Origin: Octopus bimaculoides
Lineage: Eukaryota
Assembly: GCF_001194135.2 (NCBI RefSeq)
Contig: NC_068981.1
Span: forward strand, 161,547,283-161,598,277
Reading direction: 5' to 3'
Length of the DNA: 50,995 nucleotides
Every line of letters starts with the position of its first letter. The first letter of the stretch is position 1. The translations under genes and the position numbers were made by a program. The notes under the pieces are model-generated. The model saw only the letters and a program-made list of their open reading frames with translations. It did no database searches and was not told the origin of the DNA. This document shows positions 5,377 through 50,430 of the stretch, piece by piece.

Positions 5377-6495
5377 NNNNNNNNNNNNNNNNNNNNNNNN
5401 NNNNNNNNNNNNNNNNNNNNNNNNNNNNNNNNNNNNNNNNNNNNNNNNNNNNNNNNNNNNNNNNNNNNNNNNNNNNNNNNNNNNNNNNNNNNNNNNNNNN
5501 NNNNNNNNNNNNNNNNNNNNNNNNNNNNNNNNNNNNNNNNNNNNNNNNNNNNNNNNNNNNNNNNNNNNNNNNNNNNNNNNNNNNNNNNNNNNNNNNNNNN
5601 NNNNNNNNNNNNNNNNNNNNNNNNNNNNNNNNNNNNNNNNNNNNNNNNNNNNNNNNNNNNNNNNNNNNNNNNNNNNNNNNNNNNNNNNNNNNNNNNNNNN
5701 NNNNNNNNNNNNNNNNNNNNNNNNNNNNNNNNNNNNNNNNNNNNNNNNNNNNNNNNNNNNNNNNNNNNNNNNNNNNNNNNNNNNNNNNNNNNNNNNNNNN
5801 NNNNNNNNNNNNNNNNNNNNNNNNNNNNNNNNNNNNNNNNNNNNNNNNNNNNNNNNNNNNNNNNNNNNNNNNNNNNNNNNTTTTCCAATCGAACTGAATA
5901 GTCTGTTATCGTACACGCTGTACGTAATTCTCCAGCTGAAAAGCGTGGCACAATGTGTGTGACAAGGCTTATGCCGTTTATATCATGGGTAGAACCCACC
6001 CGACGGGCTTCTTTTTTTTTTTTACCGTTTTCGTCAACCTAATTTCATTCACAACGTGTGAGTAGAAACAAAATGACATAATAATAAATGCTCAAGATGT
6101 GCAACGTTGGATTAACCATTAAGCATTAAGCATTATAAACAAGCGTTTAGAGCATCAAGGGAAGAGGAGAACGACAAAAATGAGACATAGTCTACGGCAC
6201 AAAAGAAATCACTTTAAACTTGTTAAAATAATATTCGGGATGCCACATCCCTACAAAGTATAGAAACAGATGTGTAACGTAAGATTAATTTTGAAGATCT
6301 GACCAACGACTTTGCAATTAAAAAAAAAAGTAAGGGAAAACTTTTCAAATACAAATAAAGTGGAAGTATACAAAAATAAATATTTCACATCTTACCGTTA
6401 GTTTTGTTTCATTTTTTAAAAATAACATATATTATGTTTATTTCGTTTTTGTATTTGGTTTGCAAGATTCTTTAAGTGAATTCGTGTGTTGAAGC

Positions 6496-9807: not shown

Positions 9808-10000
9808 AGGCGCAGGCGTGACTGTGTGGTAAGCAGCTTGATTACCAACCACATGGTTCTGAGTTCCGTCCCACTGCGTGGTACCTTGGGCAAGTATTTT
9901 CTACTATAGTTTCGGGCCGACCAAGGCTTTGTGTGTGGACAGAAACTGAAAGAAGCTCGTCGAATATGTGTGTGTGTGTGTGTGTATGTGTGTGTGTGTG
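9808..10000 (+). mobile_element. tRNA-derived SINE family B, 5' half ending in (TG)n
   Basis: AGGCGCAGGCGTGACTGTGTGGTAAG..CACATGGTTCTGAGTTCCGTCCCACTGCGTGGTACCTTGGGCAAG. Confidence 0.85.
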
Positions 10001-10002
10001 CA

Positions 10003-12080
10003 AGAGGGATTTCTGGAAGTTATCCATAGGCCTAGGCCCAAAAGTTCTCCGAAATAGACCGGTTAGTTGATTCTCGTCGACGCCTAGAATTTCTCCAAGA
10101 ACGTCGTCGCACTTCCCCTCCACTAGCTCTCTATAGAACGCTAGAGTGTAACTACCACCGACCCCATTGCCCGGCTGGTGGAGAGCTGTGAGCGCTTGAC
10201 GGCACTCGAGGTGCCAAGCGCTCCTCCTCAGTCTACGCCTAATCCAGTTTTTCATGTCAGGCAAAAAGACGAGCTGTGGAAAAGTGAGTCTTACAAACGG
10301 CGACCACACCTGCTCGCCGTCAAGGAAACGCTGAAGATGCCGTAGCCTGAGCGCATGTTTGCGCATCAGTAACCACAGCATTCCCAGCCCTCTATTCAGC
10401 GGCTGTTGACAGCAGATAGAGCACCTGACCGGTGGAACGCGCTTCTTCCACAGAAAGCGGAAGAGTAAGCGCATCAGCTTGGTCAACCAGCAAACGCGGC
10501 AAGGAACGACGGTCAAGTGGTAATAGATGACAGATGCGATGTACGCATTCACCACCTCGGCTTGACCTTTCAGGGACAGCTTCCTCTCGGCCCATTTCTG
10601 GGTGAGATTGACTACCCTGCTCTCACCTCGTCCCAGTTTTTCTCTACCTGGAGGTCTGGACCGAACCAGACCCCGATGAATTTAACCGGGGCCTCTGTCC
10701 AGCGCCCCACAACGCTGTTGGAAGGCATGGACTTGCCGACTTGCCGACTTGCCGAGCTGCAAGCCTACTGACTTTTCAGCGTTAATTTTTGCTCCTGTCA
10801 CCGCTTTATATTCTTTTAGTGTGTCACCGATCAGGGCTATATGCCTGTGGTTCGACATTATAGCGGTAACATCGTCAACGTAAGCAGACACACTTCTCCC
10901 ACATCTTAGATCATGCAGGACACCCCTCAAAGCCTCCAACTTCCGCAGCAATAGCTCAAGAGTCAGTACATACAGAAGGAGGAGAGAGGGCACCCTTGAC
11001 GGACTGAGTGCAAGATGCTGAATGGTTCCGACAGGTGACCATTCACCCGAACAACTGAGAAGCAGCGATCCAACCACGGACAACCCGATCGAAACCGGCT
11101 TCCCCGAGGACAAGCTGCCAAGTATTGATGGTCGACCCTATCAAAGGCTTTAGATTGGCCTAAATTGATCAGAACCCCACCCATGCCAGCTTCGTTACTC
11201 ACCTTCTCTATGATGTAGCGCATGAGATTGTCGTGAGTAGTCTTGGTTGGGATGGCGTATGTTTGCGCCTCGCCAACCAGCTTGCCCATGACAAACACCA
11301 ACCTCTTTGGATAACACCTTGGCCAAAATCTTCAACTTTGCATTGAGCGGAGTAATGGGCCTGAAATTTTCTAGAACGTCGCCCTTGTTTGAGCCCTTTC
11401 TCAGCAGTGCCACCGCCCCTCGACAGGCAAAGGTGGAAACTCCCCCATTCTGCTGCCAGTTGCAGTAGTTGTCTGCTAAGAGACTCGCAAACAAGTTTGG
11501 CATCGAAATATAAAGCTCGTAAGGCAGACCATCCCAAACCGGTGATCTGCCTCTCGTGCGGCTCTTCATCGCTTTCTGTATCTCTATAGCTGTTTTCGGT
11601 CTTTCGCAGCACTCCGCCTCGCTCGCCGAGATTCGTGGCAGGCCGTCCAGGTAGACACTGTAGTCTGCCCTCTTATCCGTCCTACCATTCGTCCTGAACA
11701 GTCGAGCAAAGTGCTGCTGAAAAGCCGTACACATGTTTCGGTTTGAACACCTCGCGCCCGTTCTGGTCCACCAAAGACCGAATGGTGGCTTTGTTGCCAC
11801 GTTTTGTCTCCGCCAATCGGGTGGCTTTCGTTCCCTCCCCGCTCTGACAACGCAACTTTCGTGTTTGGCATAAAAAAATTGGTCGAGAGCCAACCTCGCA
11901 GCCAACACGTCGGTTGCGATGCCTGTCCTAAGCGCCCCATCTAACCTTCTAACTAAGTCTCTCTCTATTCTATTTCTTTCTACTGCTAAAGCCTTTCTAA
12001 ACCTAATCAATTTTATTCTAATTGTCCTTTTAAGAGCAAACCACCAGTTGTTGTTGTTTTTTTCAGCTATTAATAATGAA
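10003..12080 (-). mobile_element. Tx1/L1-clade LINE ORF2 fragment (reverse transcriptase), frameshifted and truncated at both ends
   Basis: SPVWDGLPYELY, NFRPITPLNAKLKILAKVL, QSKAFDRVDHQYL, SVRQGCPLS, SAYVDD, GAKINAEKS, FLWK..GLGM over several frames. Confidence 0.92.
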
Positions 12081-16343: not shown

Positions 16344-16854
16344 NNNNNNNNNNNNNNNNNNNNNNNNNNNNNNNNNNNNNNNNNNNNNNNNNNNNNNNNN
16401 NNNNNNNNNNNNNNNNNNNNNNNNNNNNNNNNNNNNNNNNNNNNNNNNNNNNNNNNNNNNNNNNNNNNNNNNNNNNNNNNNNNNNNNNNNNNNNNNNNNN
16501 NNNNNNNNNNNNNNNNNNNNNNNNNNNNNNNNNNNNNNNNNNNNNNNNNNNNNNNNNNNNNNNNNNNNNNNNNNNNNNNNNNNNNNNNNNNNNNNNNNNN
16601 NNNNNNNNNNNNNNNNNNNNNNNNNNNNNNNNNNNNNNNNNNNNNNNNNNNNNNNNNNNNNNNNNNNNNNNNNNNNNNNNNNNNNNNNNNNNNNNNNNNN
16701 NNNNNNNNNNNNNNNNNNNNNNNNNNNNNNNNNNNNNNNNNNNNNNNNNNNNNNNNNNNNNNNNNNNNNNNNNNNNNNNNNNNNNNNNNNNNNNNNNNNN
16801 NNNNNNNNNNNNNNNNNNNNNNNNNNNNNNNNNNNNNNNNNNNNNNNNNNNNNN

Positions 16855-16910
16855 TGGAAAACGGCTCCCTCCTCATCGGAATATTTATAATAATTAAAAA
16901 AATAGAAGAG
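16855..16910 (+). mobile_element. Diverged 3' terminus of the R4-like family
   Basis: GAAAACGGCTCCCTCCTCATCGGAATA..AATAGAAGAG aligns loosely with GAAACCGGCTCTTTCTCTGTCGGCAATA..AATAATG and is followed by (ACAT)n. Confidence 0.5.
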
Positions 16911-17012
16911 ACATACATACATACATACATACATACATACATACGTACGTACGTACATACATACATACATACATACATACATACATACATACATACATAC
17001 ATACATACATAC

Positions 17013-17429
17013 GCTGAACTATTGAGAAATCTGCAGTTACTCTATCCAGATTACAAGTATCAGGTTTATACCTGTAATTATTGGAGTACTGGGATATATG
17101 CCAATCTTGAGAAATTAGGCTTCTCAAAACCAGAAAGGAGAAAGCTGATGAGAAGACGACAGAGTCAAGCCATCACTAGAACTGTAAAAATCTGTAAAAC
17201 TTTCCAGAAGTTTATCATTTAAGTATATATGCCATGTCTCGATATGCAAGTATATACATGAGAAGACATACATGAAACAAAGCATACACATCTACACGCA
17301 TACATACATGCATACATACATACATACATACAAAATACCCTGTTGATGTTGAACTTCGAATGAAGGAGCCTAGTTAGAAACCGGCTCTTCCTCTGTTGGC
17401 AAGAAATCCTGAAATAAAACTGAATAATG
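17013..17429 (+). mobile_element. R4-like non-LTR element, 5'-truncated, flanked on both sides by (ACAT)n
   Basis: Nucleotide match to 798-1290 (minus). Encodes LRNLQLLYP..EKLGFSKPERRKL..TVKICKTFQKFII* (stop at 17220-17222). Confidence 0.85.
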
Positions 17430-17954
17430 ACATACATACATACATACATACATACATACGTACGTACGTACGTAACTCGTGTACTGTTTGCATTAGACTG
17501 AATTGAACGGCAAACTAGATTCATATTTTGGTCATAAAACTATAACAGCATATGTCTGACTGATGAAAAATTTAGGTATATATTATTAAATAGTTCAGTG
17601 AGTGAAAGCACATTTCACGTATGGAACATTAAATTAAAATAATGGAATAAATCATTAAAGCTATCATATAGTCAGTGAGATAAAATATCTGTTAATGGCT
17701 ATTAAGTAGTGGAGTCTAAGAACTATATCGGTTCTAGTAAACTAAATAAATGAATAAATGAAACAAGCTTATGCGAGATTTTCACCTTATTTGTAAATTC
17801 AACAAGCGTGTCTGTATGTGGTCGCTCAATCTGCTAGGAATAGCAGCCGAATTTTGTATAAATAACGCTGTGATCACAGCTGGTTACTATCTTTGATACT
17901 TGGTCTTCTTGATCGATGTGGACCAACTAAATCAATTTTTTTTTTTACTTATAA

Positions 17955-18217: not shown

Positions 18218-18425
18218 TTATCTGTCTGTATGTATGTATATGAGTGTATGTATGTGTATGTGTGTGTGTGTGGGCTCCACTCAGTTTCCATCTAGCAAAT
18301 TTACTTACAAGGTCGGCGTAATGCTATAGAAGAAGAAAACACTTACCCAAAGTATCGTGTAGTGGGACTGAACCGCGAACACGTGGCTACAAACTGGGTT
18401 TCTTAACCACACAGCTACGCCTGCA
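17955..18425 (-). mobile_element. SINE family B with internal (CTGT)n/(TATG)n/(TG)n
   Basis: Tail GACTGCAGCCATGCTGGGGCA.. and head ..TTAACCACACAGCTACGCCTGCACCT in reverse orientation. Confidence 0.8.
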
Positions 18426-19224: not shown

Positions 19225-19580
19225 ACTTGTTTCAGCTACTTGACTGTGACCATGCTGGGACACAACCTTGAAGGTTTTAGTTGAACCAATTGAGCCTTGT
19301 ACACAAGCTTAGTACTTATTTTATTGGACTCTTATGTCGAACCGCTAAGTTACAGAGACATAAATACACCAACACTGGTTGTCAAGTGGTGGTAGGTGAC
19401 CAACACACACACACACACGCACACTTACACACGCGCGCGAGCACACACTCATATATATATACCGGTCTTCTTTCAGTTTCCATCCACCAAATCCACTCAC
19501 AAGGCTTTGGTCGGCCGAAGGCTACAGTGGAAGACAATTGCCCAACGTGCCATGCAGTGGGACTGAACTCGGAACCATAT
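19225..19580 (-). mobile_element. SINE family B
   Basis: Family B body and head in reverse orientation with a central (CA)n/(TA)n. Confidence 0.8.
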
Positions 19581-21075: not shown

Positions 21076-21235
21076 CGACGGCTTTCTTTCAGTTTCCGTG
21101 TACCAAATTCACTCACAAGGTCATTGACCGTCCCAAGACAATAGTGGAAGATACTTGCCTAAGGTGCCACGCAGCGTGACTGAACTCGGAACCATATGGT
21201 TGAGAAGCAAGCTTCTTACCATATAGCTATGCCTG
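19860..21235 (-). mobile_element. SINE family B interrupted by a mariner derivative in its microsatellite
   Basis: The tail half at 19860-20082 and the head half at about 21073-21235 flank 20083-20991. Confidence 0.75.
20083..20991. mobile_element. Mariner-derived fold-back element made of two inverted 5' ends
   Basis: TIR (CGA)GGTCTGATCAATAAGTATC at both ends. Plus strand encodes MTEKVEQRTCIKFCQKHGDTCSEAY; minus strand encodes QKVYGEECMNRTQVYEWFKRFQDGR..RRITIREL (mariner HTH). Confidence 0.88.
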
Positions 21236-23260: not shown

Positions 23261-23271
23261 CGATGATAGTA

Positions 23272-23305
<34 letters not shown>

Positions 23306-23535
23306 CAATGATGATGACGTCGACGACGATGATGATGACGATGATGATGTTGACGATGACGATAACGATTCTGTTGCTGCTGCTGCTGCTGCTGACGACG
23401 ACGACGACGATGATGATGACGAAGATGACGATGACGTCAACGACAATGATGATGATGATGACGATGATGACGATGACGATGCTGTTGCTATTAACACTGA
23501 CGACGACGACGACGGCGGCGGCGATGATGATGACT
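23261..23535. repeat. Compound (GAT)/(GAC)/(GCT) trinucleotide microsatellite, probably an expanded RTE tail
   Basis: Direct reading. It begins right after the RTE-like stop region. Confidence 0.9.
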
Positions 23536-24277: not shown

Positions 24278-25105
24278 ATCTTTCTTTCTTTACCTGAGTG
24301 TCTGCTAATACTTTGCATCTACCACGTCCTCGCGTTGTTGTCTTTTTCTTGTGTTTATTTTTCGTTTTAATGTTTATATGCCAACAGAATATAGCAGTCC
24401 TATAAANNNNNNNNNNNNNNNNNNNNNNNNNNNNNNNNNNNNNNNNNNNNNNNNNNNNNNNNNNNNNNNNNNNNNNNNNNNNNNNNNNNNNNNNNNNNNN
24501 NNNNNNNNNNNNNNNNNNNNNNNNNNNNNNNNNNNNNNNNNNNNNNNNNNNNNNNNNNNNNNNNNNNNNNNNNNNNNNNNNNNNNNNNNNNNNNNNNNNN
24601 NNNNNNNNNNNNNNNNNNNNNNNNNNNNNNNNNNNNNNNNNNNNNNNNNNNNNNNNNNNNNNNNNNNNNNNNNNNNNNNNNNNNNNNNNNNNNNNNNNNN
24701 NNNNNNNNNNNNNNNNNNNNNNNNNNNNNNNNNNNNNNNNNNNNNNNNNNNNNNNNNNNNNNNNNNNNNNNNNNNNNNNNNNNNNNNNNNNNNNNNNNNN
24801 NNNNNNNNNNNNNNNNNNNNNNNNNNNNNNNNNNNNNNNNNNNNNNNNNNNNNNNNNNNNNNNNNNNNNNNNNNNNNNNNNNNNNNNNNNNNNNNNNNNN
24901 NNNNNNNNCTGCAAATTAAGATATATAAATCTCGCTTTATGAGACGCTCTCATATAATAAATTCAAATTACGACAAACGTAAATAAACAAACGAAGTTTG
25001 CTTTTAGAAGCGTTGAGATGTCTTTAGAAAGTTAAATGATTATAAAAAATTCTCAATCGCATAAAGCGAGATTTATATATCTTAATTTGCAGAGGAATTT
25101 GTAGT

Positions 25106-27922: not shown

Positions 27923-29861
27923 CCAGGGTTTTCCGAAAATCCACCCATCCATTAGATCGCCCATGGGCGTTTATTTGGATGGGCGGTTATTTGAGGTTAA
28001 AAGTTGAAACAGAGTTAGTGTTCTTGTTTCCATTCTGTTTAGACGTTCATTTGCTCTACGTCTGTAGATAAATTCAAAGAATTTTTATTCCCAATAATGG
28101 AGTCGAAAGAAAATATATCAAAACGTGTTCAACGATCATATACCATTAGTGATAAATTGAGTGCTATTAAACGAGTGAAAGAACATTCTGGCAATTTATC
28201 TACTGCGTCAAGAGACAGGTATTGATAGAAAACGATTGAGAGAATGATGCACAAAAGAAACTGAGTTAATCCATATGTCAGACAAGAGGAGGCGCAGATC
28301 AATTGGTGGAGGTAGAGGACCAGCACATAGAGATCTAGAGTTTGAACTCTTACAGTGAATTGTTGTTCAGCGTGCAAACAATATAATTGTAAATTGTCGC
28401 CATTTATGGGAATATACTTTTGAATTGGTAAAAAGGTTTGGAATTGAAATGAACAGCTTTAGATGTTCTGATAAATAGATTTTCAATTTCATGAAACGGA
28501 ATAAATTGACTGTGAGAAAGATTACTCATGTTGGTCAAGCAGACAATAAAACACTTAGAGAAAAGGCACAAATCGCCAGTGACTATCTAGATAGCATTCC
28601 AGTATTAATAGCAGATAAGGATACTGACCAGATTTATAATATGGATGAAACACCTGTATACGTTGACATGTTGAGTTCAACAACCATAGACTTTGTTGGC
28701 TATAAAAATGTAGGTGCTAGCCACTGTGGTGCTACCAAAGCTCGTTTTACTGTTGTGTTGTGTGTTAATGTTGCAGGAAAGGTTTTGAAAACAATGATTA
28801 TCCTTAAAGGATTGAAAAACGTGCCCAAAATCAAGGTCCCAAAGAATATTCACTTAAAAGTCTCCAACAGGGGATCAATCACATATGAACTCATGGAGCT
28901 GTGGGCTGACAAAGTGTTTGGGCAGAGAGCAGCACAACAATTCTATGCTAAAAATTCAGTGCTATTCATGGATGAATGCTCAGTGCACAAGAAAACAGAG
29001 CTCCTAGAATTGTTCAAACGTAGGAATACAAGTCTCAAAATTATACCTCCTAAAACAACATCTTACTTGCAGCCGTTAGATGTATCAATTATTGATCCTT
29101 TCAAGGAAGCCCTTTGTGCTGAATGGGAGAATTGGTTTTCAAATGGCAAAAAGGAGTATACAAATAAAGGATATCGCAAAAAACCTTATTATCAAGAGAT
29201 AGTGAACTTTGTGACCCAAGCTGTTGCCACTTTAAATAACGAAACTACAAAGCGTGCTTTTGAGTGTTGTGGAATTACTCCTCGTGGACAGACTGTAGAA
29301 CATAGACTCTTAAGCACACGCTTACAGTATGTTTTGTCTGGCCTTGAGGTAAATTCAACAGATGCACACAATGACAAAATTGAAGATGAGATACAAGTAA
29401 TTGAAATTTGCTCTGATGTGAATTATGGCCAAGCAACAAATGAAGAAATTCGTGATATTTAACTTGAAACTATTCGGTTATTATTCTACCATAAATGCCC
29501 AAGGACATTATTTGTTCATATGAGGCTTCTATCCATGTTTTCAACAGTTTAATTTTCAATATTTCCTAATAGATCCATTGTTAACTTCAGAAAATTTTTT
29601 AATATGCTACTTTTTTTAAGGATGTTTCAGTTTCTTTATGTCTATATATCTGATAACTGAAACGATAGAAGTTTAATGGAATTGTATAAAATAAATATGG
29701 TTTTTGAGAATATCTTTGCTTTTCCTAGGTGAAATATTTTACTTCCATATCACTGCCCATGGGCGCTTATTATAGGTGGGCGGTTATTTAAGCCAAAAAA
29801 TAGTTTTGTAAAACAGAATTTTCCGTTTAAGAGCCCTGGGCGGATTTTCGGAAAACTCTGG
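27923..29861 (+). mobile_element. Full-length pogo-superfamily DNA transposon (DD35D), defective
   Basis: TIR CCAGGGTTTTCCGAAAATCCACCCA versus CCAGAGTTTTCCGAAAATCCGCCCA, with a TA TSD. A subterminal direct repeat GCCCATGGGCG..GGGCGGTTATTT occurs near both ends. Confidence 0.93.
28097..29462 (+). pseudogene. pogo transposase (Brinker/CENP-B-like HTH region plus DDE_1 domain), with one frameshift and three stops in the N-terminus
   Basis: ATG at 28097 (MESKENISKRVQRSYTISDKL). The catalytic motifs NMDETP, FMDECSVH and QPLDVS have 35 residues between the last two Asp. 28491-29462 is open. Confidence 0.9.
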
Positions 29862-30708
29862 TATATACTGTTCAGTTTTTACGTGTTGAAAAATATGTCT
29901 TTCAACTTGTTCTACAATACATTTCAACGCTACAAAAACAAACATAACTTTGTTTACATATGACGTGATTTGTAGAATGTATATTGGTTCTGTACAAACC
30001 TGGATTATGAATTAAAGTTCGTCTACATCTACAATTTTACCTTTCCTTACACTTCATTTATTGTGTTTGCATATACTGAAAATGTATTTTTTATATATAT
30101 ATATATTCTTTACTTGAACTGTACCGGCAGACTTGGATGTTTTGACATCCCTTTGAAGGATTTCGGTCAAATTTATATGTTTATACATATATATGTATAT
30201 ATGTACATATATATATANNNNNNNNNNNNNNNNNNNNNNNNNNNNNNNNNNNNNNNNNNNNNNNNNNNNNNNNNNNNNNNNNNNNNNNNNNNNNNNNNNN
30301 NNNNNNNNNNNNNNNNNNNNNNNNNNNNNNNNNNNNNNNNNNNNNNNNNNNNNNNNNNNNNNNNNNNNNNNNNNNNNNNNNNNNNNNNNNNNNNNNNNNN
30401 NNNNNNNNNNNNNNNNNNNNNNNNNNNNNNNNNNNNNNNNNNNNNNNNNNNNNNNNNNNNNNNNNNNNNNNNNNNNNNNNNNNNNNNNNNNNNNNNNNNN
30501 NNNNNNNNNNNNNNNNNNNNNNNNNNNNNNNNNNNNNNNNNNNNNNNNNNNNNNNNNNNNNNNNNNNNNNNNNNNNNNNNNNNNNNNNNNNNNNNNNNNN
30601 NNNNNNNNNNNNNNNNNNNNNNNNNNNNNNNNNNNNNNNNNNNNNNNNNNNNNNNNNNNNNNNNNNNNNNNNNNNNNNNNNNNNNNNNNNNNNNNNNNNN
30701 NNNNNNNN

Positions 30709-30801
30709 CATATACATCTATACATATACTTGTAAACATATACATCTATATATATACATGTATGTATATATGCATATATGTACATACATATATATGTACA
30801 G

Positions 30802-30848
<47 letters not shown>

Positions 30849-31150
30849 CATATATATGCATGCATGCATGTATGTATGTATGCATGTATGTATGTATACA
30901 TGCATGTATATATATAATATGTAATATGAGATAATAGTTTCACTATTAAAAGTGAAACTACTATCTCACATTACAATAGGGATGTTATTGTTTCACTTTT
31001 GACACAATACTGAAACAGTGTAAGAGATTGCTCTGGGCTCGCATTAGGCAAGAAGCTGAAATTTTTGGGTGCAAGTCACTCAATGGACCTAAGTAGTGCA
31101 TCTGTAAAATTTGAATGAAATCGGTTGGGCAGTTCTCGAGTTTTAGTGAT

Positions 31151-31239
<89 letters not shown>

Positions 31240-31400
31240 TTATCAGTATTATATATATAGATATAATATGTGTGCGTGCGTGTGTATGTGTGTGAGCATC
31301 TATGTATATATATATGTGTCTTTGTGTGTGTGCGTGTGTATGTGTAGATTTTTGTGTGTGAGTATATATGTATAAATGCATGTGTGTATATGTGTGTGTG
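30709..31400. repeat. Compound (CA)n/(TA)n/(TATG)n/(TG)n microsatellite field with a short unique insert
   Basis: Direct reading. Confidence 0.9.
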
Positions 31401-32076: not shown

Positions 32077-32511
32077 NNNNNNNNNNNNNNNNNNNNNNNN
32101 NNNNNNNNNNNNNNNNNNNNNNNNNNNNNNNNNNNNNNNNNNNNNNNNNNNNNNNNNNNNNNNNNNNNNNNNNNNNNNNNNNNNNNNNNNNNNNNNNNNN
32201 NNNNNNNNNNNNNNNNNNNNNNNNNNNNNNNNNNNNNNNCATGACTACTGTCCAGTGATTGAACATTTCAGTTATCCGACTGCGTTTATGGTGGGATTAT
32301 CATCTTGAGATATTTCATTAGTTGTATGAAATATTAGTTGCAATATACATAATTTCATGTTTCTGTAGCAATGTCATTATGTATGAAACTTACAGCTACT
32401 GATACAGGTAGTTAAAGAATTGTAAAAAAAAAATTGCTTGAAAAGACAATTTTGAAAAATGCATTCAGAGATGCTGGAGTGGTCGTTCCCGTTGCTTCCT
32501 ATTAACTACGC

Positions 32512-33180: not shown

Positions 33181-35205
33181 AGGCGTGTCTGTGTGGTAAG
33201 AAGCTTGCTTCCGGTTACTGCGCATGCGTTGATTCATTTGCTGTTTTTTTTTTTTGAGAGTTGGACAGAATTTTTGTGCTACTTACAGCGGTTTAGAGAA
33301 AATGTATTCAGACGTTAGCGGGTCTGAATTGTCTTCAGCAGAGGAGGAGATGGTGAAGGCGGTGAGAAGAATGGACGAAATATTGGAGAGAACAAGAAGT
33401 TTTTTCTGAGTCGGCGGAGGTGAAGAAAAAGGGTGTAGAGCTGGTTGGACTAAAGGAATATGGNNNNNNNNNNNNNNNNNNNNNNNNNNNNNNNNNNNNN
33501 NNNNNNNNNNNNNNNNNNNNNNNNNNNNNNNNNNNNNNNNNNNNNNNNNNNNNNNNNNNNNNNNNNNNNNNNNNNNNNNNNNNNNNNNNNNNNNNNNNNN
33601 NNNNNNNNNNNNNNNNNNNNNNNNNNNNNNNNNNNNNNNNNNNNNNNNNNNNNNNNNNNNNNNNNNNNNNNNNNNNNNNNNNNNNNNNNNNNNNNNNNNN
33701 NNNNNNNNNNNNNNNNNNNNNNNNNNNNNNNNNNNNNNNNNNNNNNNNNNNNNNNNNNNNNNNNNNNNNNNNNNNNNNNNNNNNNNNNNNNNNNNNNNNN
33801 NNNNNNNNNNNNNNNNNNNNNNNNNNNNNNNNNNNNNNNNNNNNNNNNNNNNNNNNNNNNNNNNNNNNNNNNNNNNNNNNNNNNNNNNNNNNNNNNNNNN
33901 NNNNNNNNNNNNNNNNNNNNNNNNNNNNNNNNNNNNNNNNNNNNNNNNNNNNNNNNNNNNNNNNNNNNNNNNNNNNNNNNNNNNNNNNNNNNNNNNNNNN
34001 NNNNNNNNNNNNNNNNNNNNNNNNNNNNNNNNNNNNNNNNATCCTGCAGGTGGAGGAGAAGCAGCTAGAGAGTCTGGCGGAGACGGTGACGTTGGGAGAA
34101 ATTGTTAAGAGTGTGGGTGGAGGGCAGAGTCTCACGTTGTTTTAAATGTGACCAAAAGGACCACATTAGAGCACACTACAGAAGAAAACAATAGATGAAA
34201 CAACAGACGAACCAGTTGTGGAGACGGAGGAGAAAAGAGAGGAAGAAAAGAAAGACTGAGGAAAGGAGGAAGAATGGGTAGTAACAGAGAGTAGAAGGAA
34301 GAAGAGGAAGAAAAGAAAGAACACTGAGTGTAATGTGGTAACCCAGTCCAACTCCATCCCACCCAAGACCACTCAGACCCACCCGCCTTATACAGACACC
34401 GACCCACCCACCCCCTTTTCCCACAGGAAAAAAAAAGAAAAAGAAAAAAGAGCAGACCACAGAATTTAGAAGACCCCTCCCCCGGTGAAAAAGGTTACGA
34501 AAGATTGTTGTCATTGAGCGATAACGAGAGCGGAAATAGAAGGACTAGACCAGAGACTAAAAAGGAATTAGGATTTAGAGGCAGCGAGTGGTGTTACTCA
34601 GTGTGGGATGAGTGACACACTCTTCATATTTTCATTTTCAGATATCATGCATGTTATCATAACCTTAATTTATTTTCTCATGTTCATTTTCACGTCACTC
34701 ATAGTATCATATATTATTTTTACATATTCTTAATTGTTATATGTCCCCCACATGTTTTGTAGTGTCCCCTCTATGTTATGCCTTTATGGCAAAATATTGA
34801 AATAAAGAAGCTTTCTTCTCAACTACATGGCTCCAGGTTCAGACTCACTGAGTGACACCTTGAGCGAGTGTCTTCTATTATAAGCCTCTGGCCGACTTAG
34901 ACACTGTGAGTGGATTTGGTAGAGGGAAACTGAACGCAGCCCGTCGCACATATATATATATATATGTATATATTTATATGTATGTGTTTGTCTTTGTGTC
35001 TGTGTTTGTCCTCCCACCATCGCTTGACAACCGATGTTGGTGTGTTTACGTTCCCATAACGTGGCGGTTCGGCAAAATGGACCGATAGAATAAATACTAG
35101 GCTTACAAAGAATAAATTCTGGGGTCAATTTGTTCGACTAAAAACCCCTTCAAGGCGGTGCTCCAGCATAGCCACAGTCTAATGACTGAAACAACTAAAA
35201 GAATA
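33181..35205 (+). mobile_element. SINE family B split in its tRNA head by the 33213-34804 insertion
   Basis: The head 33181-33212 resumes at 34805 with (AAGAAGCTT..)CAACTACATGG and continues to the AAAGAATAAAAGAATAA tail. Confidence 0.82.
33213..34804 (+). mobile_element. ORF1-only Tx1/L1-derived retroelement (HAL1-like) with 15-bp TSD
   Basis: ATG at 33302 (MYSDVSGSE..); after the gap ILQVEEKQLESLAETVTLG..VEGRVSRCFKCDQKDHIRAH (knuckle), then a K/E-rich tail and about 190 nt ending AATAAA. TSD AAGAAGCTTGCTTCC/AAGAAGCTTTCTTCT. Confidence 0.78.
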
Positions 35206-36639: not shown

Positions 36640-37769
36640 TAAATAACGACGGGAAGCATTGAATTATAGCTTGTAAAGTTGTTTTTCTTAAGGTAATTAC
36701 GAAATGGTAACGCGTAATTTCACCGAGTACTGTCAAAATATGAGTAATTCATTTTAGTTATTGGTTTTGGCGACATAGCTTCGAAGGTTTTGTTTACTGA
36801 ATAAGCTAGGCAGATGTAATTTTGGTTCACCTAAATCCTGTGAGTATTCAACGCTTTGATGGGTTGTCAACTATATTATTAGTCTTCAGACCAACGCATG
36901 CTGCGGACAAATTCAAACGTTGAGGTTTACCTTTCAATCCAGCCTGAAGTGACCGAAATTGTGATAATGCAGACATTCCCAACAAGGCAGAGTTATGTAT
37001 TTCACAAACAAGAAACCTTATCTAATGTCTTCTTTTTACCTTTTGCTTGTTTTAAAGTCTGGTACTTTTTCTATCGGTCGATTTAAACAAATTAACACCA
37101 ATTGTCAAGCAGGGAAGCGGGTACAAAGACACACACACACACACACACATTATCGAACATACATAATCTATGTGCTGTGTTTGTTCACTGGTAGGCTGCA
37201 ATTTGGCACAGTGGAGATGACTCCTTCAAAGTGCCGGGTGTTAAAACTCTTGAAAATCATAGACAAGGCGAGAAAACTCGCCTTAAGTCTCATTCCGGAG
37301 CGATGGACATTGTTGTTTCCCCATTTTTGTGGTTTATCAACGTCACGTACCCATATATATATATATATATANNNNNNNNNNNNNNNNNNNNNNNNNNNNN
37401 NNNNNNNNNNNNNNNNNNNATAAGTATCATGTAATATACAAAGATTTAAATGCAAGCCACTATGAGTTTAATGCCTTTAATAATGCAATGCTCAGCGTCC
37501 GACAATTGTATTATCTGAGACATGAAACTGAAACTTATAGTAGTTTGTATTTAACTACTGCATATAATAAATGTGATCGCTTTCTTTTTGTCTCTGTCTC
37601 AGTCTGTCTACCTGCCTGTCTGTCTGATTCTCTCTCTCTCTCTCTATCTATAAGTACACACGCACACACACACACACATACTGAGTCATCCTATAAATAA
37701 TGCTGTTTTTTCAATTGCATGAAATAAGAGTTGGAAAGGAATGGGATAAACTACCTGCATCAACTTGCT

Positions 37770-40395
37770 ATAAAAGCAGGTAGTAATTTTACCTTGTTCA
37801 TTCTTAGTGCAAGTCTCCTGTTGTTGGTACGTTTTACTATTTTCCCTGTGTTTTGTTTGGTTGAAGAAATGCTGTGGAGAGTTGTTGTTGGTTTTGTTGA
37901 AAAGAACTGTTGATTGCTTTTTTGGAAGCAGCTTGTTGAAATTCCCCACCCCTGCGGGGGAATTATTGTTATTATATTTTGTAGCTTTTTAAGCCAATTT
38001 TGTGAAAAAAAAAAAGGAAACTTCTTTGCTTTCACCAGTGTCTGAAGCAGGTGAAAAGAGAATTTTACCGGCGGTGACGCCGAGAAAATTAAACTTTTGT
38101 GGAGAGAAAATATCACCGGTGGTATCGCCCAAAAAGTTCGCCGAGGTAGCGGAAGAAAAGAAACTCAGATAAACACGGAGAGAAGCAACCTGCAAAGATA
38201 CATGTCAATGTTAAAAAAAGAGGGGACCGAAATTCAAGTGGCCCCTCCGGAAGAAACAACTGACATAGTTAACAGGAGGAGAATCTTGTATAAAACTTAC
38301 ACCATAGCGAAAAAAAATGGATATATAAAACCGAGGAGAAAATAGTGGGAAAATGCCTCAGACCCTAAGAACGGAGGAGGTGGTTCTTCTTCCCGTATAT
38401 ATGGGAAGAAAAACGTCAAAGGAGAATTAGAAGGGACAATGCTAATTCAAGCAGAAGTCACAACCCTCGAAAAGATTGCAGAAATGATAAATGTCGGCGG
38501 AGAAGAAAGATTGATAGTATTTGTTGAAGGAAGAAAGCCAAGGCGTTTTAACTGCGGGTTGAAGGGCCACATAAGATCGGAATGTAAACCGAAAGAAACA
38601 GAACAACAATAACAACAACAAGAATTAGAAGAAACAACAAATGAAACGCCAACACCAACACCGAAAGTAGAGTCAACACCAATGCCGACAGAAGAGAGTG
38701 AAGAGAAAGACAGGGCGGAGGGGTGGCCGACTGTTTAAAAAAAAAACAAAAAAAAACACAGACCGCCCCTACTAAACTGAACTTTAAAAAAAAAGAACAA
38801 GAAAGTAAAAGAAAATATGTATATGGCCATTAAGGCATCAAGCAATAGACTCATTAACCGTTTGGCAGCTACTTCATCTGCCAAACTTGTTGAAAAGACC
38901 TCATCAAAAGCCTTTTTTATTTATAAAATCGGCCGAAAGGATTACGGACGGTTAAAGACCGAATTCTTTCACGAATTAGGCCCTCTCAGAATGGATTTTT
39001 CTCCATATATATACGAGGGCCTACGTTCAAATTTGCCTACGTTTCCCTCGAGCCCGGGCAAAGGAGAAAGAAAAAGAAAATGAGAACGAACGAACCTCGA
39101 AACACTGATGCAAGGGTAAGCAATATCGAACATTCGCGTAGGTTGTTTAATGGCGTGGCCTAGTGTCAAGCTGGAAGCAAGGTCGCTTCCTTAATGACAT
39201 CAGGTCGCGTAATTTGGGTGTTATTGTTCTTACAGAAACCCGGTTAAGGGGGCCAAGAGATCTGCTCCCGCTGTTGGATGGTTACGAGAATTTTTTCTCT
39301 CCAAGCTTGACATAGATAAGCTATATAGTAGAGACTCCGGCTACTGGAAACTTTTGGTGATTAAAGAGGACAGAGACCGGACTAAGTTGTTGATTCAGAG
39401 GGCATTAATCGGTTCCATTATTAATAACAAATGGTGGTATGCTCTCAAGCGAGCCATTAAATTTAAGTCTATTAAATATAGCATAGGTTTAGTGACTAGA
39501 GAGGCTAGGAGGGAATCAGCTTTAGTTAAGGACTTAGAGGAAGCAATGAGAACTGGCTGTGCGACTCAGGTGAAGACCAAGAGACTGGCGTTAAACCAGC
39601 ACCTCGAAGCCAAACACATGAGTTGCATTGTCAGGGCTAGACTTCGTGCAGTGGGTTGTGAGGGAATCAAGGCTGCAAGTTGAGCCCGAGTGGTGGAAGC
39701 CCAAAGTGGTAATGATGCCACAATCCGATCTTTGACGAACCAACAAGGGAAGTTGATAGACGAACCCGAAGAGATGTGTGAGGCCTTTCAGGAGTACTTC
39801 GCCCAGCTATTCGGTGGGGGCGGCGGACCGGATAATAGTAGGGACCTAACGGACTTCCTCGCCGGGCTGCTGCGCCTCTCGGGGTGGGACGCGGAGTGCT
39901 GTGAAGGGCCGATCACGCTTGAGGAAGTAATTGAAGCTATGGCAGACTGCGGCGCGGGTAAGGCGCCAGGACTGGATGGTCTACCCTACGAGTTGTAGAA
40001 GAGTATGCCAGACTTGTTCGGGCACCTGCTGGTGAATGTCTACGCGAACTGGCAGCAGAACGGGTTTATTCCCAGATCTGTGCACCGGGGAGGGGTGACG
40101 CTTGTCAGAAAGGACCCGGACAAGGGGGGATTCCGTTGATAATTTTTGGCCTATCACTCTGCTAAACGCAGAGTTGAAGATTTTAGCCAAATTGTTATCG
40201 AAAAGATTGGCGATGTCGCGGATGGTGTAATCGGGGAGGCACAGACATGTGCCGTTCCCAGCAGAACCGTCCAGGATAATCTCCATCTTATACGGTACAC
40301 TTTAGAGGGGTTTAATAGTGATTCTGGCAAGTATGGGGCACTGGTCCATTTAGACCAATCAAAGGATTTCGATAGGGTCGACCATCGGTACCTGT
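37770..40395 (+). mobile_element. Tx1/L1-clade LINE: ORF1 (zinc knuckle), partial APE endonuclease and N-terminal RT, 3'-truncated
   Basis: VFVEGRKPRRFNCGLKGHIRSEC (38521-38585); RVGCL..RGL..LGVIVLTET (about 39135-39240); GKAPGLDGLPYEL, PITLLNAELKILAKLL and LDQSKDFDRVDHRYL. The 5' boundary is approximate. Confidence 0.9.
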
Positions 40396-40689
40396 GGAAC
40401 AGATACGATAATGTATCTTGCATTACCTCCTAACAGTTCCGTCAGTTTATCGCTATGGATTAGTAGTTATTTTTTCTTTTCTTTTTTATCGACCTCGAAA
40501 GGATGACAATCAAAAGCTAGCCTAGTAGGATTTGAACTCTGGGCACAGAGTCGGAACAAATACTGCAAGGCATTCTATCCAACGTTCTAGCGGCGCTGCC
40601 TTACGTGATGATACTGCTGATTCTATTGTTTTTTTCTCTACAGTAGCAACTTAAAGATTATGTTTATTTGTAATAATTCTTTCCATTGT

Positions 40690-46293: not shown

Positions 46294-46464
46294 TATATCA
46301 TGAGAATACATACAAAAAAACAAAACATACAAATCTGCACGTATATATATTTACAAAAATACCCTGTTGATGCTGGTGAAATTCCAATGATGGAGCCTTG
46401 GATCTAAGTTAAAAACTGACTCTTTCTCTATTGGCAAGAAATCTCGAAATAAAACTGAATAATG
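46294..46464 (+). mobile_element. R4-like element, 3' UTR only, flanked on both sides by (ACAT)n
   Basis: CATGAGAATACATAC..AAATACCCTGTTGATG..GAAATAAAACTGAATAATG matches the 3' UTRs at 798-1050 (minus) and 17223-17429. Confidence 0.82.
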
Positions 46465-46680
46465 ACACATACATACATACATACATACATAACACAAATA
46501 ATATAGGAGCATATGCATGTATACATACATATATGTATATACCTACATCTACATGTATATATAGATGCATATCCGGGTACAGGATGTCAAAAAGGAACGG
46601 GAACATAAAGCACAAAAAACGGACTTTTTTACAGACAACAAAATGAACACATAGGAAAACAGACGAGCCACTTATGGAAC

Positions 46681-46752
46681 TTTTCCTTCATCAGCTGCCT
46701 CTATTCTAAACTAGGCGTTTCGAAAATGAGGCAGAACGCGCTCTTAGAATAG
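46681..46752 (-). ncRNA. Candidate hammerhead ribozyme with permuted (ABCABC) strand order, followed by a T-rich Penelope-like tail
   Basis: Minus strand: CUAUUCUAA GAGC GCGU-U / CUGCCUC AUUUUC GAA-ACGC CUAGUUUAGAAUA GAGGCAG CUGAUGA A GGAAAA. All three stems are in register with the core. Confidence 0.6.
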
Positions 46753-46789
46753 CTCTACACACACATACATGCATGCATACATACATAAT

Positions 46790-46915
46790 CTTTCATCTAC
46801 CAAATTCACTCATAAGGCTTTGATCGACCCGGGGCTATAGTAGAAGACACTTTTCCAAAATGTCACGCAGTGGGACTGAAATCAAGACCATATGGTTGGG
46901 AAGCAAACCACACCT
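46790..46915 (-). mobile_element. SINE family B, head half
   Basis: CCAAATTCACTCATAAGGCTTTG..GCAGTGGGACTGAA..CCATATGGTTGGGAAGCAA. Confidence 0.75.
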
Positions 46916-49109: not shown

Positions 49110-49323
49110 TATCTTTTATTTGTTTCAGCCATTAGACTGTAGCTATGCTGGGGCACTGCCTTCAATTTTTAGTTCTATAGTTCTTTTTCTAAGCCTGGTA
49201 TTTATTTTATCAATCTCTTTTGCTGAACTGCTATGCTATGGGAATGCAAACACACCAACACCAGTTGTCAAGTGGTGGTGAGGGGTAAACACAGACAGAA
49301 AGATACACACACATAGATATACA

Positions 49324-49379
<56 letters not shown>

Positions 49380-49535
49380 ACGGGATTCTCTCAGTTTCCA
49401 TCTACCAAATCCAATCACAAAGCTTTAGTTGGCCTGAGGCTATAAGCAGAAAACACCTGCCCAAGGTGCCACGCAATGGGACTGAACCTGGAACCATGTG
49501 GTTGGGAAGCACGCTTCTTATCACACAGCCATGCA
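49110..49535 (-). mobile_element. SINE family B
   Basis: Tail, central (TA)n(TG)n and head in reverse orientation. Confidence 0.82.
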
Positions 49536-50059
49536 TATATACATATATATGTGTGTGTGTGCACGCGCGCGCATTTGTATATGTATGTATTCATGTATAC
49601 TAATAATACTTGTATTCATGGAAGTTCTACAGTTATATTGCAAACAGTAAGATTATTGGAAGTTTATAGGGAGCATAAAATATATCATTTGTTTTGAAAA
49701 TTTCTTATTTGAGAGTGTTTCATCCTTTTGAAGACATACAGAAAGTGAAGGCACAATCTTAGGAAAGATTTCTTCTTGAAGGCTATACATATGTCACCTC
49801 TTCAACCTTGAAAGCTGTTATACAATATCATCATCGTTATCCGTATTATTTTTTATATTGATTTCAAGAAATGAAAACCAAATCATAATCTGTGTATAAA
49901 ATTTTTTTCTGTATGGCATGAATACATTGGGGTCTTAACCCTTTTATTACCAACCTGTCTCAAACCATGCCTTGTTCTATGGTGCAAACTTCCTACTTTA
50001 ATCCTTTAGCATTCAGATTATTCTGTCAAACATACTCTTTACTCTTTACTCTTTTAGCT

Positions 50060-50319
50060 GTTTCAGTCATTTGACTGCGGTCATGCTGGAGCATCGCCTT
50101 TAGTCGAGCAAATCGACCCCAAAACTTATTCTTTGTAAGCCTAGTACTTATTCTATCGGCCCCTTTTGCCGAACCGCTAAGTTACGGGGACGAAAATATA
50201 CCAACATTGATCGTCAAGTGATGTTGGGGAGACAAACACAGACACACAAACATATACACATACATACATACATACATACATANNNNNNNNNNNNNNNNNN
50301 NNNNNNNNNNNNNNNNNNN

Positions 50320-50368
<49 letters not shown>

Positions 50369-50430
50369 TACACACATATATACGACGGGCCTCTTTCAGT
50401 TTCCGTCTACCAAATCCACTCACAAGGCTT
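50060..50430 (-). mobile_element. SINE family B lacking its head, spanning a small gap
   Basis: GTTTCAGTCATTTGACTGCGGTCATGCTGGAGC..CGACGGGCCTCTTTCAGTTTCCGTCTACC. Confidence 0.82.

What the first reader, a model, noticed from the sequence alone, without database searches (positions are those of the whole stretch)
46681..46752. Hammerhead ribozyme core in an anti-cyclic strand order (three mutually crossing stems)
Seen on the minus strand, 5' to 3': GCGU-U (46739-46735), CUGCCUC (46734-46728), AUUUUC (46727-46722), GAA-ACGC (46721-46715), a 13-nt linker, GAGGCAG (46701-46695), CUGAUGA (46694-46688), an extra A, and GGAAAA (46686-46681). This gives stem III ACGC/GCGU, a 7-bp stem I and a 5-bp stem II, each exactly in register with the conserved core and a GUU triplet. 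An optional 9-bp extension CUAUUCUAA/UUAGAAUAG is also present. Established: types I-III are the three circular permutations of the strands. Here the order is NUH strand, GAAA strand, CUGAUGA strand, which matches none of them and would be missed by standard descriptors. Inference: either a monomeric ABCABC pseudoknot (stems I and II are adjacent in the fold, so a zero-length link is plausible) or a strand-swapped dimer. A T-rich tail ending in (AT)n follows, as in the Penelope tails here. A competing GGAA-aag-UUCC hairpin exists.
Basis: partly seen in the sequence, partly recalled or inferred. Interest (0 to 1): 0.9.

Follow-up and report, generated by a model that had tools for sequence, protein, structure and literature searches.

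The report
Chance look-alike of permuted hammerhead ribozyme
The hammerhead-ribozyme letters are really there in the unusual strand order, but that order was already described in 2023 (type SGC), and this single, unconserved copy with two very weak helices is most likely a chance match in junk DNA between two retroposon tails.

Summary
The strand order (cleavage-site block, GAAA block, CUGAUGA block) is not unprecedented. It is the "type SGC" non-circular permutation of Eckert et al., NAR 2023, validated by cleavage assays and compensatory mutants.

The candidate fits that architecture formally: stem I 7 bp, 1-nt linker, stem II 5 bp, an extra nucleotide after CUGAUGA, stem III 4 bp. Support for function is poor:
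- Stem II and the helix tying stems I and II, both required in the validated SGC-3, are worth about -0.1 kcal/mol each, against -4.8 to -7.8 in validated members.
- The region prefers two ordinary hairpins (-31.2 kcal/mol, z = -0.78).
- It has no paralog in the window, no homolog in the searchable collections and no sequence similarity to published members.
- There is no hammerhead of canonical (type I-III) layout, no hairpin ribozyme and no Penelope ORF nearby.

Chance expectation is about 0.004 per window for any strand order, and about 1.5e-5 to 3e-4 for SGC with a short linker. That is roughly one or more per gigabase-scale genome.

Verdict: probably fortuitous. About 5% that it is a biological ribozyme, about 10% that it cleaves detectably in vitro.

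The parts
46736..46739 (-). Stem III 5' strand GCGU (ends in U16.1)
   Evidence: pairs with ACGC 46715-46718; 4 bp, -3.4 kcal/mol
46735..46735 (-). U17 of the GUU triplet; predicted cleavage would be between 46735 and 46734
   Evidence: position inferred by analogy with hammerhead numbering, not tested
46728..46734 (-). Stem I 5' strand CUGCCUC
   Evidence: 7 bp with GAGGCAG, -11.3 kcal/mol
46727..46727 (-). Single unpaired A linking stem I to stem II (published family: 3-4 nt)
46722..46726 (-). Stem II 3' strand UUUUC
   Evidence: 5 bp incl. one G.U with GGAAA, about -0.1 kcal/mol
46718..46721 (-). GAAA core (G12 A13 A14 A15.1)
46715..46718 (-). Stem III 3' strand ACGC
46702..46714 (-). 13-nt spacer; GAAU 46703-46706 could form the 5' strand of the stem I-II tying helix
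   Evidence: helix 4 bp incl. G.U; -0.1 kcal/mol
46695..46701 (-). Stem I 3' strand GAGGCAG
46688..46694 (-). CUGAUGA core
46687..46687 (-). Extra A between A9 and G10.1 (published SGC members have an extra U here)
46682..46686 (-). Stem II 5' strand GGAAA
46677..46680 (-). GUUC, possible 3' strand of the tying helix; also part of the competing GGAA-AAG-UUCC hairpin
46744..46752 (-). CUAUUCUAA, 5' arm of a competing 9-bp helix with UUAGAAUAG 46701-46709
   Evidence: -7.6 kcal/mol; formed in the 131-nt MFE
46653..46659 (-). UUUUCCU, a stronger alternative partner (7 bp, -5.5 kcal/mol) for AGGAAAA 46681-46687
46759..46906 (-). SINE-like repeat (46791-46906) and its (UGUA)n tail (46759-46790), immediately 5' of the candidate
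46355..46572 (+). Second short repeat family (46355-46466) with an (ACAT)n and degenerate microsatellite tail (46467-46572), bounding the candidate's 185-nt segment on the other side

Best explanation
This is a fortuitous match to the type-SGC hammerhead pattern, in a unique 185-nt stretch of non-coding DNA (46573-46758) trapped between the simple-repeat tails of two short retroposon-like repeats in a draft eukaryotic scaffold. One strong 7-bp complementarity (CUGCCUC/GAGGCAG) happens to abut a CUGAUGA heptamer. The surrounding A/T-rich sequence cheaply supplies a GAAA, a U-run that pairs weakly with GGAAA, and a 4-bp GCGU/ACGC. If transcribed, the RNA would fold mainly into two ordinary hairpins and would not self-cleave at a meaningful rate. 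Shown: the letters, the null expectations, the energies and the absence of relatives. Inferred: lack of activity and lack of function.
For: - Chance rates: 0.003-0.005 per window for any strand order. For SGC order with a short linker, 2.8e-4 per window at 5/4/4 and about 1.5e-5 (extrapolated) at 7/5/4, i.e. about 0.3-5 per Gb. One such hit per large genome is therefore expected.
- No enrichment: CTGANGA 19 vs 20.4 expected; relaxed hammerhead-like parses 14 vs about 17 expected.
- Weak helices: stem II and the I-II tying helix are about -0.1 kcal/mol each, against -4.8 to -7.8 in the validated SGC-1 and SGC-3. Disrupting either helix abolished cleavage in SGC-3.
- Competing folds: the 131-nt MFE of -31.2 kcal/mol consists of two plain hairpins that use the stem-I strands and pair AGGAAAA with the downstream UUUUCCU; z = -0.78. 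For the 101-nt stretch z = -1.27.
- No relatives: no paralog in the window; none in metagenome or viral contigs; an nhmmer profile of published SGC sequences does not hit it at E <= 100.
- No Rfam hammerhead or hairpin ribozyme anywhere in the window, and no canonical CUGANGA-helix II-GAAA unit.
- Eckert et al. searched RefSeq and found no permuted hammerhead in a known organism's genome, apart from one unsupported type-GCS hit.
Against: - The match is formally complete: every invariant core position is present and all three stems are in exact register.
- For a single 51-kb window the SGC-specific chance probability is only 1e-5 to 3e-4.
- A lone pattern-search hit without covariation (GCS-1) did cleave in vitro in the published work.
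- Conservation could not be tested at all, so the absence of homologs reflects a limit of the available databases and is not a negative result.
Confidence: 0.85

Rival explanations
1. It is a genuine monomeric type-SGC hammerhead ribozyme (double pseudoknot), encoded in an animal-type DNA genome. Stem I forms first. The adjacent U-run and GAAA dock onto the CUGAUGA-A-GGAAA strand, helped by the covalent 1-3-nt link. The RNA then cleaves after U46735, perhaps slowly or with a protein or cofactor.
For: - S-G-C order with a complete core, and stems 7/5/4 in register.
- Its parameters lie within the range of published members on the same greedy parse: stem I 6-8 bp, linker 0-4 nt, stem II 5 bp, extra nucleotide present.
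- The topology is experimentally proven to fold and cleave.
- The per-window chance probability is low.
- An extra unpaired nucleotide at the start of stem II also occurs in Penelope-element hammerheads and some canonical ones.
Against: - Stem II and the tying helix are thermodynamically negligible, and both are required in SGC-3.
- Stem III is 4 bp, against 5-7 bp in the family.
- The triplet is GUU, not GUC or AUC.
- Stronger alternative folds exist.
- It is a single copy with no homologs found and no sequence similarity to the family.
- The genomic setting differs from the family's: known members are metatranscriptomic RNAs found together with hairpin ribozymes, and none is present here.
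Confidence: 0.08
2. It is a strand-swapped dimer or trans-acting hammerhead. The contiguous strand CUGCCUC-A-UUUUC-GAAACGC of one transcript is bound and cleaved by the GAGGCAG-CUGAUGA-A-GGAAA strand of another copy.
For: Pairing in trans removes the topological constraints. Dimeric action is established for animal type I and Penelope-element hammerheads.
Against: - The same negligible stem II applies.
- No second copy exists in tandem or nearby, whereas dimeric hammerheads occur as tandem or closely spaced repeats.
- Published SGC ribozymes work as monomers, so a dimer is not needed to explain the order.
Confidence: 0.02
3. It is a decayed remnant of a canonical type III or Penelope-type minimal hammerhead. 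Stem I (26-nt loop), CUGAUGA, an unpaired A and a 6-7-bp helix II (AGGAAAA...UUUUCCU) would survive, while the downstream GAAA and helix III have been lost by mutation.
For: The AGGAAAA/UUUUCCU helix is 7 bp and -5.5 kcal/mol, and forms in the MFE. A long helix II with an unpaired 5' nucleotide is typical of Penelope-element min-hammerheads.
Against: - The 4 nt after UUUUCCU are AUGU, not GAAA, and no helix III partner follows.
- No Penelope ORF, flanking repeat or second copy is present.
- A-run/U-run pairings are cheap in this T-rich sequence.
Confidence: 0.03

Closest known systems
Type-SGC hammerhead ribozymes (HRIMA-1 motif and type-SGC variants; Eckert, Friedrich, Weinberg & Weinberg, Nucleic Acids Res 2023, PMC10085705)
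   Same: - Same 5'-3' block order: cleavage site, then GAAA, then CUGAnGA.
- Same three mutually crossing stems.
- One side of stem I is joined almost directly to one side of stem II.
- 5-bp stem II starting with G-C, and one extra nucleotide after CUGAUGA.
- A spacer precedes the stem I 3' strand, with a possible helix tying stems I and II.
   Different: - No sequence similarity to the family.
- Stem I is strong while stem II and the tying helix are near 0 kcal/mol; validated members show the reverse pattern.
- Stem III is 4 bp vs 5-7 bp.
- GUU triplet vs GUC/AUC, and extra A vs U.
- It sits in a DNA scaffold between retroposon tails, whereas family members are metatranscriptomic, presumably circular RNAs carrying a hairpin ribozyme.
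- It is a single copy with no covariation evidence.
GCS-1, the lone type-GCS hammerhead candidate of Caballeronia peredens (same paper)
   Same: A single genomic pattern-search hit in a non-circular order, with no homologs and no covariation. Its biological relevance was left open by the authors.
   Different: GCS-1 was shown to cleave in vitro (0.014 per min). It has a different block order and is bacterial. The present candidate is untested.
Penelope-like-element minimal hammerheads and other animal type I hammerheads (Cervera & de la Pena 2014, PMC4209133)
   Same: [quoted passage not shown]
   Different: Those hammerheads are type I (C-G-S order) with a 7-8-bp helix II hairpin followed by GAAA, little or no helix III, many copies, tandem or paired arrangement and dimeric action. 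None of these features is found here.
Canonical hammerhead types I, II, III (Rfam Hammerhead_1, Hammerhead_II, Hammerhead_3, HH9, HH10)
   Same: The same conserved core letters and the same three helices around it.
   Different: The block order is not a circular permutation of the canonical one, and no Rfam model matches at E <= 10.

Membership tests
Type-SGC hammerhead ribozyme | Block order S (cleavage site) - G (GAAA) - C (CUGAnGA) on one strand | tested here: met
   definition
Type-SGC hammerhead ribozyme | All invariant core positions: CUGAnGA, GAAA, A15.1-U16.1 pair, H17 not G | tested here: met
   U17 (GUU) is allowed by the NUH rule (established knowledge) but is not the triplet seen in the parsed members (GUC/AUC)
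Type-SGC hammerhead ribozyme | Stem I of at least 5 bp starting right after the cleavage site and ending right before CUGAnGA | tested here: met
   7 bp, -11.3 kcal/mol
Type-SGC hammerhead ribozyme | Short linker (published 3-4 nt) from stem I directly into the stem II 3' strand | tested here: met
   1 nt at maximal pairing, or 3 nt (UCA) if the two distal stem I pairs open. Published members give 0-4 nt on the same greedy parse
Type-SGC hammerhead ribozyme | Stable stem II (about 5 bp) flanking CUGAnGA(+1 nt) and GAAA | tested here: inconclusive
   Length and register are met (5 bp, G10.1-C11.1 closing pair). However, it has one G.U and three A-U pairs and is worth about -0.1 kcal/mol, vs -4.8 and -7.1 in SGC-3 and SGC-1
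Type-SGC hammerhead ribozyme | Stem III of 5-7 bp enclosing the S and G blocks | tested here: not met
   4 bp (GCGU/ACGC), then a C.C mismatch; the members parsed have 5-7 bp. It can be extended only through an internal loop by the 9-bp helix, which then blocks stem I and the tying helix
Type-SGC hammerhead ribozyme | Helix tying the free sides of stems I and II (required for cleavage in SGC-3) | tested here: inconclusive
   GAAU 46706-46703 / GUUC 46680-46677 is in the expected place, but it is 4 bp with one G.U and about -0.1 kcal/mol, vs -6.6 and -7.8 in validated members
Type-SGC hammerhead ribozyme | Covariation or conservation of the stems among homologs (the authors' acceptance criterion) | not testable with these tools
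   No paralog in the window. Nearby ORF handles are absent from the protein collections. Metagenome and viral DNA scans gave only chance hits or none. No eukaryotic genome DNA is searchable here
Type-SGC hammerhead ribozyme | Sequence relatedness to HRIMA-1 or the type-SGC variants | tested here: not met
   An nhmmer profile of 10 published sequences does not hit 46681-46752 at E <= 100
Type-SGC hammerhead ribozyme | Context: metatranscriptomic (probably circular) RNA with a hairpin or other ribozyme on the opposite strand | tested here: not met
   The source is a draft DNA scaffold with N-gaps, SINE/LINE remnants and microsatellites. No hairpin ribozyme or other ribozyme was found by Rfam. 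Context definition
Type-SGC hammerhead ribozyme | Site-specific self-cleavage abolished by mutating the G in CUGAnGA | not testable with these tools
   Needs in vitro transcription and cleavage assays
Canonical hammerhead (types I/II/III) | Block order is a circular permutation of S-C-G, giving a pseudoknot-free three-way junction | tested here: not met
   The order is S-G-C; no Rfam hammerhead model matches at E <= 10
Penelope-like-element minimal hammerhead | CUGAUGA + helix II hairpin + GAAA in type I order, multiple or tandem copies in the flanking repeats of an element with RT/GIY-YIG ORF | tested here: not met
   No CUGANGA site in the window has a helix II-GAAA hairpin of more than 3 bp. 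There is no second copy and no intact ORF in either flank. The only RT remnants lie 6 kb away on the other strand and at 9.8-12 kb, and are LINE-like

The most novel reading that the evidence does not exclude
This would be the first type-SGC (non-circularly permuted, double-pseudoknot) hammerhead ribozyme encoded in the DNA genome of a eukaryote. It would have arisen independently of the metatranscriptomic HRIMA-1 lineage in unique sequence beside a SINE, with an unusually strong stem I compensating for a minimal stem II.
Probability: 0.05. Interest if true: 0.6.

Novelty: not a real feature. Interest (0 to 1): 0.2.

Why it matters
If it were active, it would extend non-circularly permuted hammerheads from unknown environmental RNA replicons to an animal-type chromosome. 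It would also support the view that hammerheads arise repeatedly by convergence, in any strand order.

As it stands, its main value is cautionary. The 'anti-cyclic' order is already a known, named type. A formally perfect descriptor match is expected about once per large genome by chance, which is why the discoverers of type SGC demanded covariation before accepting a hit.

Tried and rejected
- Rfam 15 at gathering threshold and at E <= 10, on the whole window and on 201 nt: no hammerhead or other ribozyme. The only hits are microsatellite-driven pseudo-miRNAs.
- Paralog search by blastn inside the window: none for 46573-46758.
- Routes to orthologs: ten neighbouring ORFs are not in the protein collection, and the DDE transposase ORF is not on record. 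The GC-rich ORFs at 9.8-12 kb turned out to be LINE RT remnants, not a host gene.
- DNA scans: the 20-mer C block in metagenome contigs gave 9 hits with unrelated flanks. The 20-mer S-G junction is absent from viral contigs.
- A covariance model from the published SGC sequences was prepared (alignment A2) but abandoned. MAFFT misplaced gaps in the paired strands, and a CM cannot encode the two crossing stems. A descriptor positive control and an nhmmer profile were used instead.
- The cluster of CTGACGA sites near 23 kb is a (GAT/GAC)n array, not ribozyme-related.
- The weak type I-order parse at 27732 (stems 4/3/4) is at chance level.
- One simulation timed out and one crashed on N characters; both were rerun.
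- The source organism was not identified. The SINE sequence reminds me of cephalopod (octopus) SINEs, but this is a recollection and was not tested.

Full report
**1. Observation**

On the minus strand the window reads ...CUAUUCUAA GAGC GCGU U|CUGCCUC A UUUUC GAAA CGC CUAGUUUAGAAUA GAGGCAG CUGAUGA A GGAAA A GUUCC....

The pairings are in exact hammerhead register:
- C1.1(46734)-G2.1(46695) abuts C3 of CUGAUGA.
- G10.1(46686)-C11.1(46722) abuts G12 of GAAA.
- A15.1(46718) pairs with U16.1(46736).
- H17 is U46735.

Stem I is 7 Watson-Crick pairs. Stem II is 5 pairs including one G.U. Stem III is 4 pairs. One A (46687) is inserted between A9 and G10.1. A script that grows the three stems outward from the core motifs recovers exactly this parse (I/II/III = 7/5/4) as the only strong hammerhead-like assembly in the window.

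**2. The strand order is already known**

[quoted passage not shown] They divide the hammerhead into block S (cleavage site), block G (GAAA) and block C (CUGAnGA). Types I, II and III are CGS, GSC and SCG.

They describe a natural type SGC: 583 sequences, made up of the HRIMA-1 motif plus variants. [quoted passage not shown] Five members cleaved at the predicted site. In SGC-3, disrupting any of the four helices abolished cleavage and compensatory changes restored it. Rates were 0.007-0.19 per min.

**3. Fit to the published family**

The published rows read, for example, AGUAGUC^AUGUU-UA-CGCUC-GAAA-CUACU-GGAG-AACAU-CUGAUGA-U-GAGCG-A-CUCC. As a positive control I ran my descriptor on ten published sequences. 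Nine parse as S-G-C with an extra U after CUGAUGA. The tenth has a transcription error in the held text.

| Feature (same greedy metric) | Published members | Candidate |
|---|---|---|
| Stem I | 6-8 bp | 7 bp |
| Stem I-II linker | 0-4 nt | 1 nt |
| Stem II | 5 bp (3 bp in one row) | 5 bp |
| Stem III | 5-7 bp | 4 bp |
| Cleavage triplet | GUC or AUC | GUU |
| Extra nucleotide after CUGAUGA | U | A |

The candidate also has a possible tying helix, GAAU(46706-46703)/GUUC(46680-46677), in the expected position.

There is no sequence similarity. An nhmmer profile of the published sequences does not touch the candidate at E <= 100. No Rfam 15 model does either, even in a 201-nt search.

**4. Energetics argue against an active fold**

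| Helix, duplex energy in kcal/mol | Candidate | SGC-1 | SGC-3 |
|---|---|---|---|
| Stem I | -11.3 | -1.2 | -2.9 |
| Stem II | -0.1 | -7.1 | -4.8 |
| Stem III | -3.4 | -7.1 | -2.9 |
| Tying helix | -0.1 | -7.8 | -6.6 |

The two helices that are essentially unstable here are both required for cleavage in SGC-3.

Competitors are stronger:
- CUAUUCUAA/UUAGAAUAG is worth -7.6 kcal/mol. It crosses stem I, shares G46701 with it and sequesters the tying-helix strand.
- AGGAAAA pairs better with the downstream UUUUCCU 46659-46653 (-5.5 kcal/mol) than with the upstream UUUUC.

The 131-nt MFE (-31.2 kcal/mol) consists of exactly these two ordinary hairpins and is no more stable than shuffles (z = -0.78). 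For the 101-nt stretch z = -1.27.

**5. Chance expectation**

- CTGANGA occurs 19 times against 20.4 expected.
- Relaxed hammerhead-like parses number 14 against about 17 expected.
- For any of the six block orders with stems >=7/5/4 within 150 nt, 3000 dinucleotide-preserving shuffles (global and 300-nt blocks) give 0.003-0.005 hits per window.
- Restricted to S-G-C with a 0-4-nt linker, a Markov simulation with a planted core gives 2.8e-4 per window at 5/4/4, 1.05e-4 at 5/5/4 and 3.9e-5 at 6/5/4. At 7/5/4 there were none in 1.5 million trials, extrapolating to about 1.5e-5. These rates correspond to about 5, 2, 0.8 and 0.3 per Gb.
- Keeping the real C block and shuffling only the real upstream 120 nt gives 2e-5 per site at 5/4/4 and about 5e-6 (one event) at 7/5/4.

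The match is therefore rare for one window. It is nevertheless expected about once, or a few times, in a gigabase-scale genome, and the thresholds were set post hoc. Eckert et al. expected false positives from such patterns and accepted only hits with covariation.

**6. Context**

The window is a draft eukaryotic scaffold. It has eight N-runs and many microsatellites. It also carries:
- a SINE-like family with at least 7 copies;
- a second short repeat family;
- LINE-type RT remnants;
- a DDE transposase ORF.

On the minus strand the candidate begins just after the (UGUA)n tail of one SINE-like copy (46906-46759). It is followed by T-rich sequence and the (ACAT)n tail of the other repeat family (46572-46355). 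The 185-nt segment between them has no other copy in the window.

The 'Penelope tail' context is not supported:
- Both flanks have about one stop per 15 codons.
- No Penelope RT or GIY-YIG ORF was found.
- None of the 19 CUGANGA sites has a canonical helix II-GAAA hairpin. The window therefore contains no hammerhead of canonical (type I-III) layout, which includes the Penelope-type min-hammerheads of Cervera & de la Pena 2014.

The published SGC ribozymes live in metatranscriptomic, presumably circular RNAs carrying hairpin ribozymes. [quoted passage not shown]

**7. Comparative evidence could not be obtained**

- Ten neighbouring ORFs and the transposase ORF are absent from the protein-indexed assemblies.
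- The candidate's 20-mers gave only unrelated chance hits in metagenome contigs and none in viral contigs.
- No eukaryotic genome DNA collection is searchable here.

Conservation and covariation, the decisive computational tests, therefore remain open.

**8. Verdict**

The best explanation is a fortuitous match to the type-SGC descriptor in unique non-coding DNA between two retroposon tails (confidence about 0.85). The rivals are:
- a genuine but atypical type-SGC ribozyme (about 0.08, of which about 0.05 for biological relevance);
- a trans or dimeric hammerhead (about 0.02);
- a decayed canonical or Penelope-type hammerhead (about 0.03).

If it did cleave, it would be a new member of a known kind, and notable as the first type-SGC hammerhead in a eukaryotic chromosome.

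Noticed in passing
window 5377-5880, 16344-16854, 24407-24908, 30218-30708, 32077-32239, 33464-34040, 37372-37419, 50283-50319: Eight runs of N (scaffold gaps): the window is a draft eukaryotic assembly. Several long 'ORFs' listed across these gaps are artefacts.
   Followed up: partly
window 46791-46906(-), 49396-49511(-), 21101-21210(-), 19478-19580(-), 18286-18372(-), 9838-9937(+), 34812-34923(+): A SINE-like family of about 115 nt (consensus ...GGTTCCGAGTTCAGTCCCACTGCGTGGCACCTTGGGCAAGTGTCTTCTACTATAGCC...GGAAACTGAAAGAAGCCCGTCG) with variable simple-repeat tails, at least 7 copies. It resembles cephalopod SINEs as I recall them; this was not tested.
   Followed up: partly
window 46355-46466(+), 17335-17430(+), 798-905(-): A second short repeat family of about 110 nt (AAAATACCCTGTTGATG...AAAACTGAATAATGAC) flanked by (ACAT)n microsatellites, three copies.
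   Followed up: partly
window 9842-12010(-) and 39354-40433(+): Frame-shifted remnants of non-LTR (LINE-type) reverse transcriptases, with GLPYELY, SKAFDRVDH and YVDDV motifs. RVT_1 matches 40146-40433 at E = 3e-4.
   Followed up: partly
window 28491-29462(+): A 323-aa ORF with a DDE_1 superfamily endonuclease/transposase domain (E = 5.6e-22). This exact protein is not on record in the assemblies index.
   Followed up: partly
window 23262-23530(+): A (GAT/GAC)n trinucleotide array, with a short (GCT)n run. It accounts for two of the five CTGACGA sites on the + strand (23392, 23497) and for the cluster of weak nhmmer hits there. It could encode an acidic tract or be a plain microsatellite.
   Followed up: no
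window 800-1050, 16900-17500, 30700-31330, 46470-46580, 49290-49610, 50250-50390: Dozens of sub-threshold Rfam 'miRNA' matches (mir-297, mir-3149, mir-1277, mir-466, mir-568). All of them are (TG)n, (TA)n or (TGTA)n microsatellite hairpins, not genes.
   Followed up: yes
window 46701-46752(-): The 15-mer UUAGAAUAGAGGCAG is complementary to two upstream segments that occur in swapped order (CUAUUCUAA ... CUGCCUC). The 9-bp and 7-bp helices therefore cross each other and share G46701. A 9-bp perfect complement within 60 nt is expected about 10 times per window by my rough calculation, so this is probably coincidence.
   Followed up: partly
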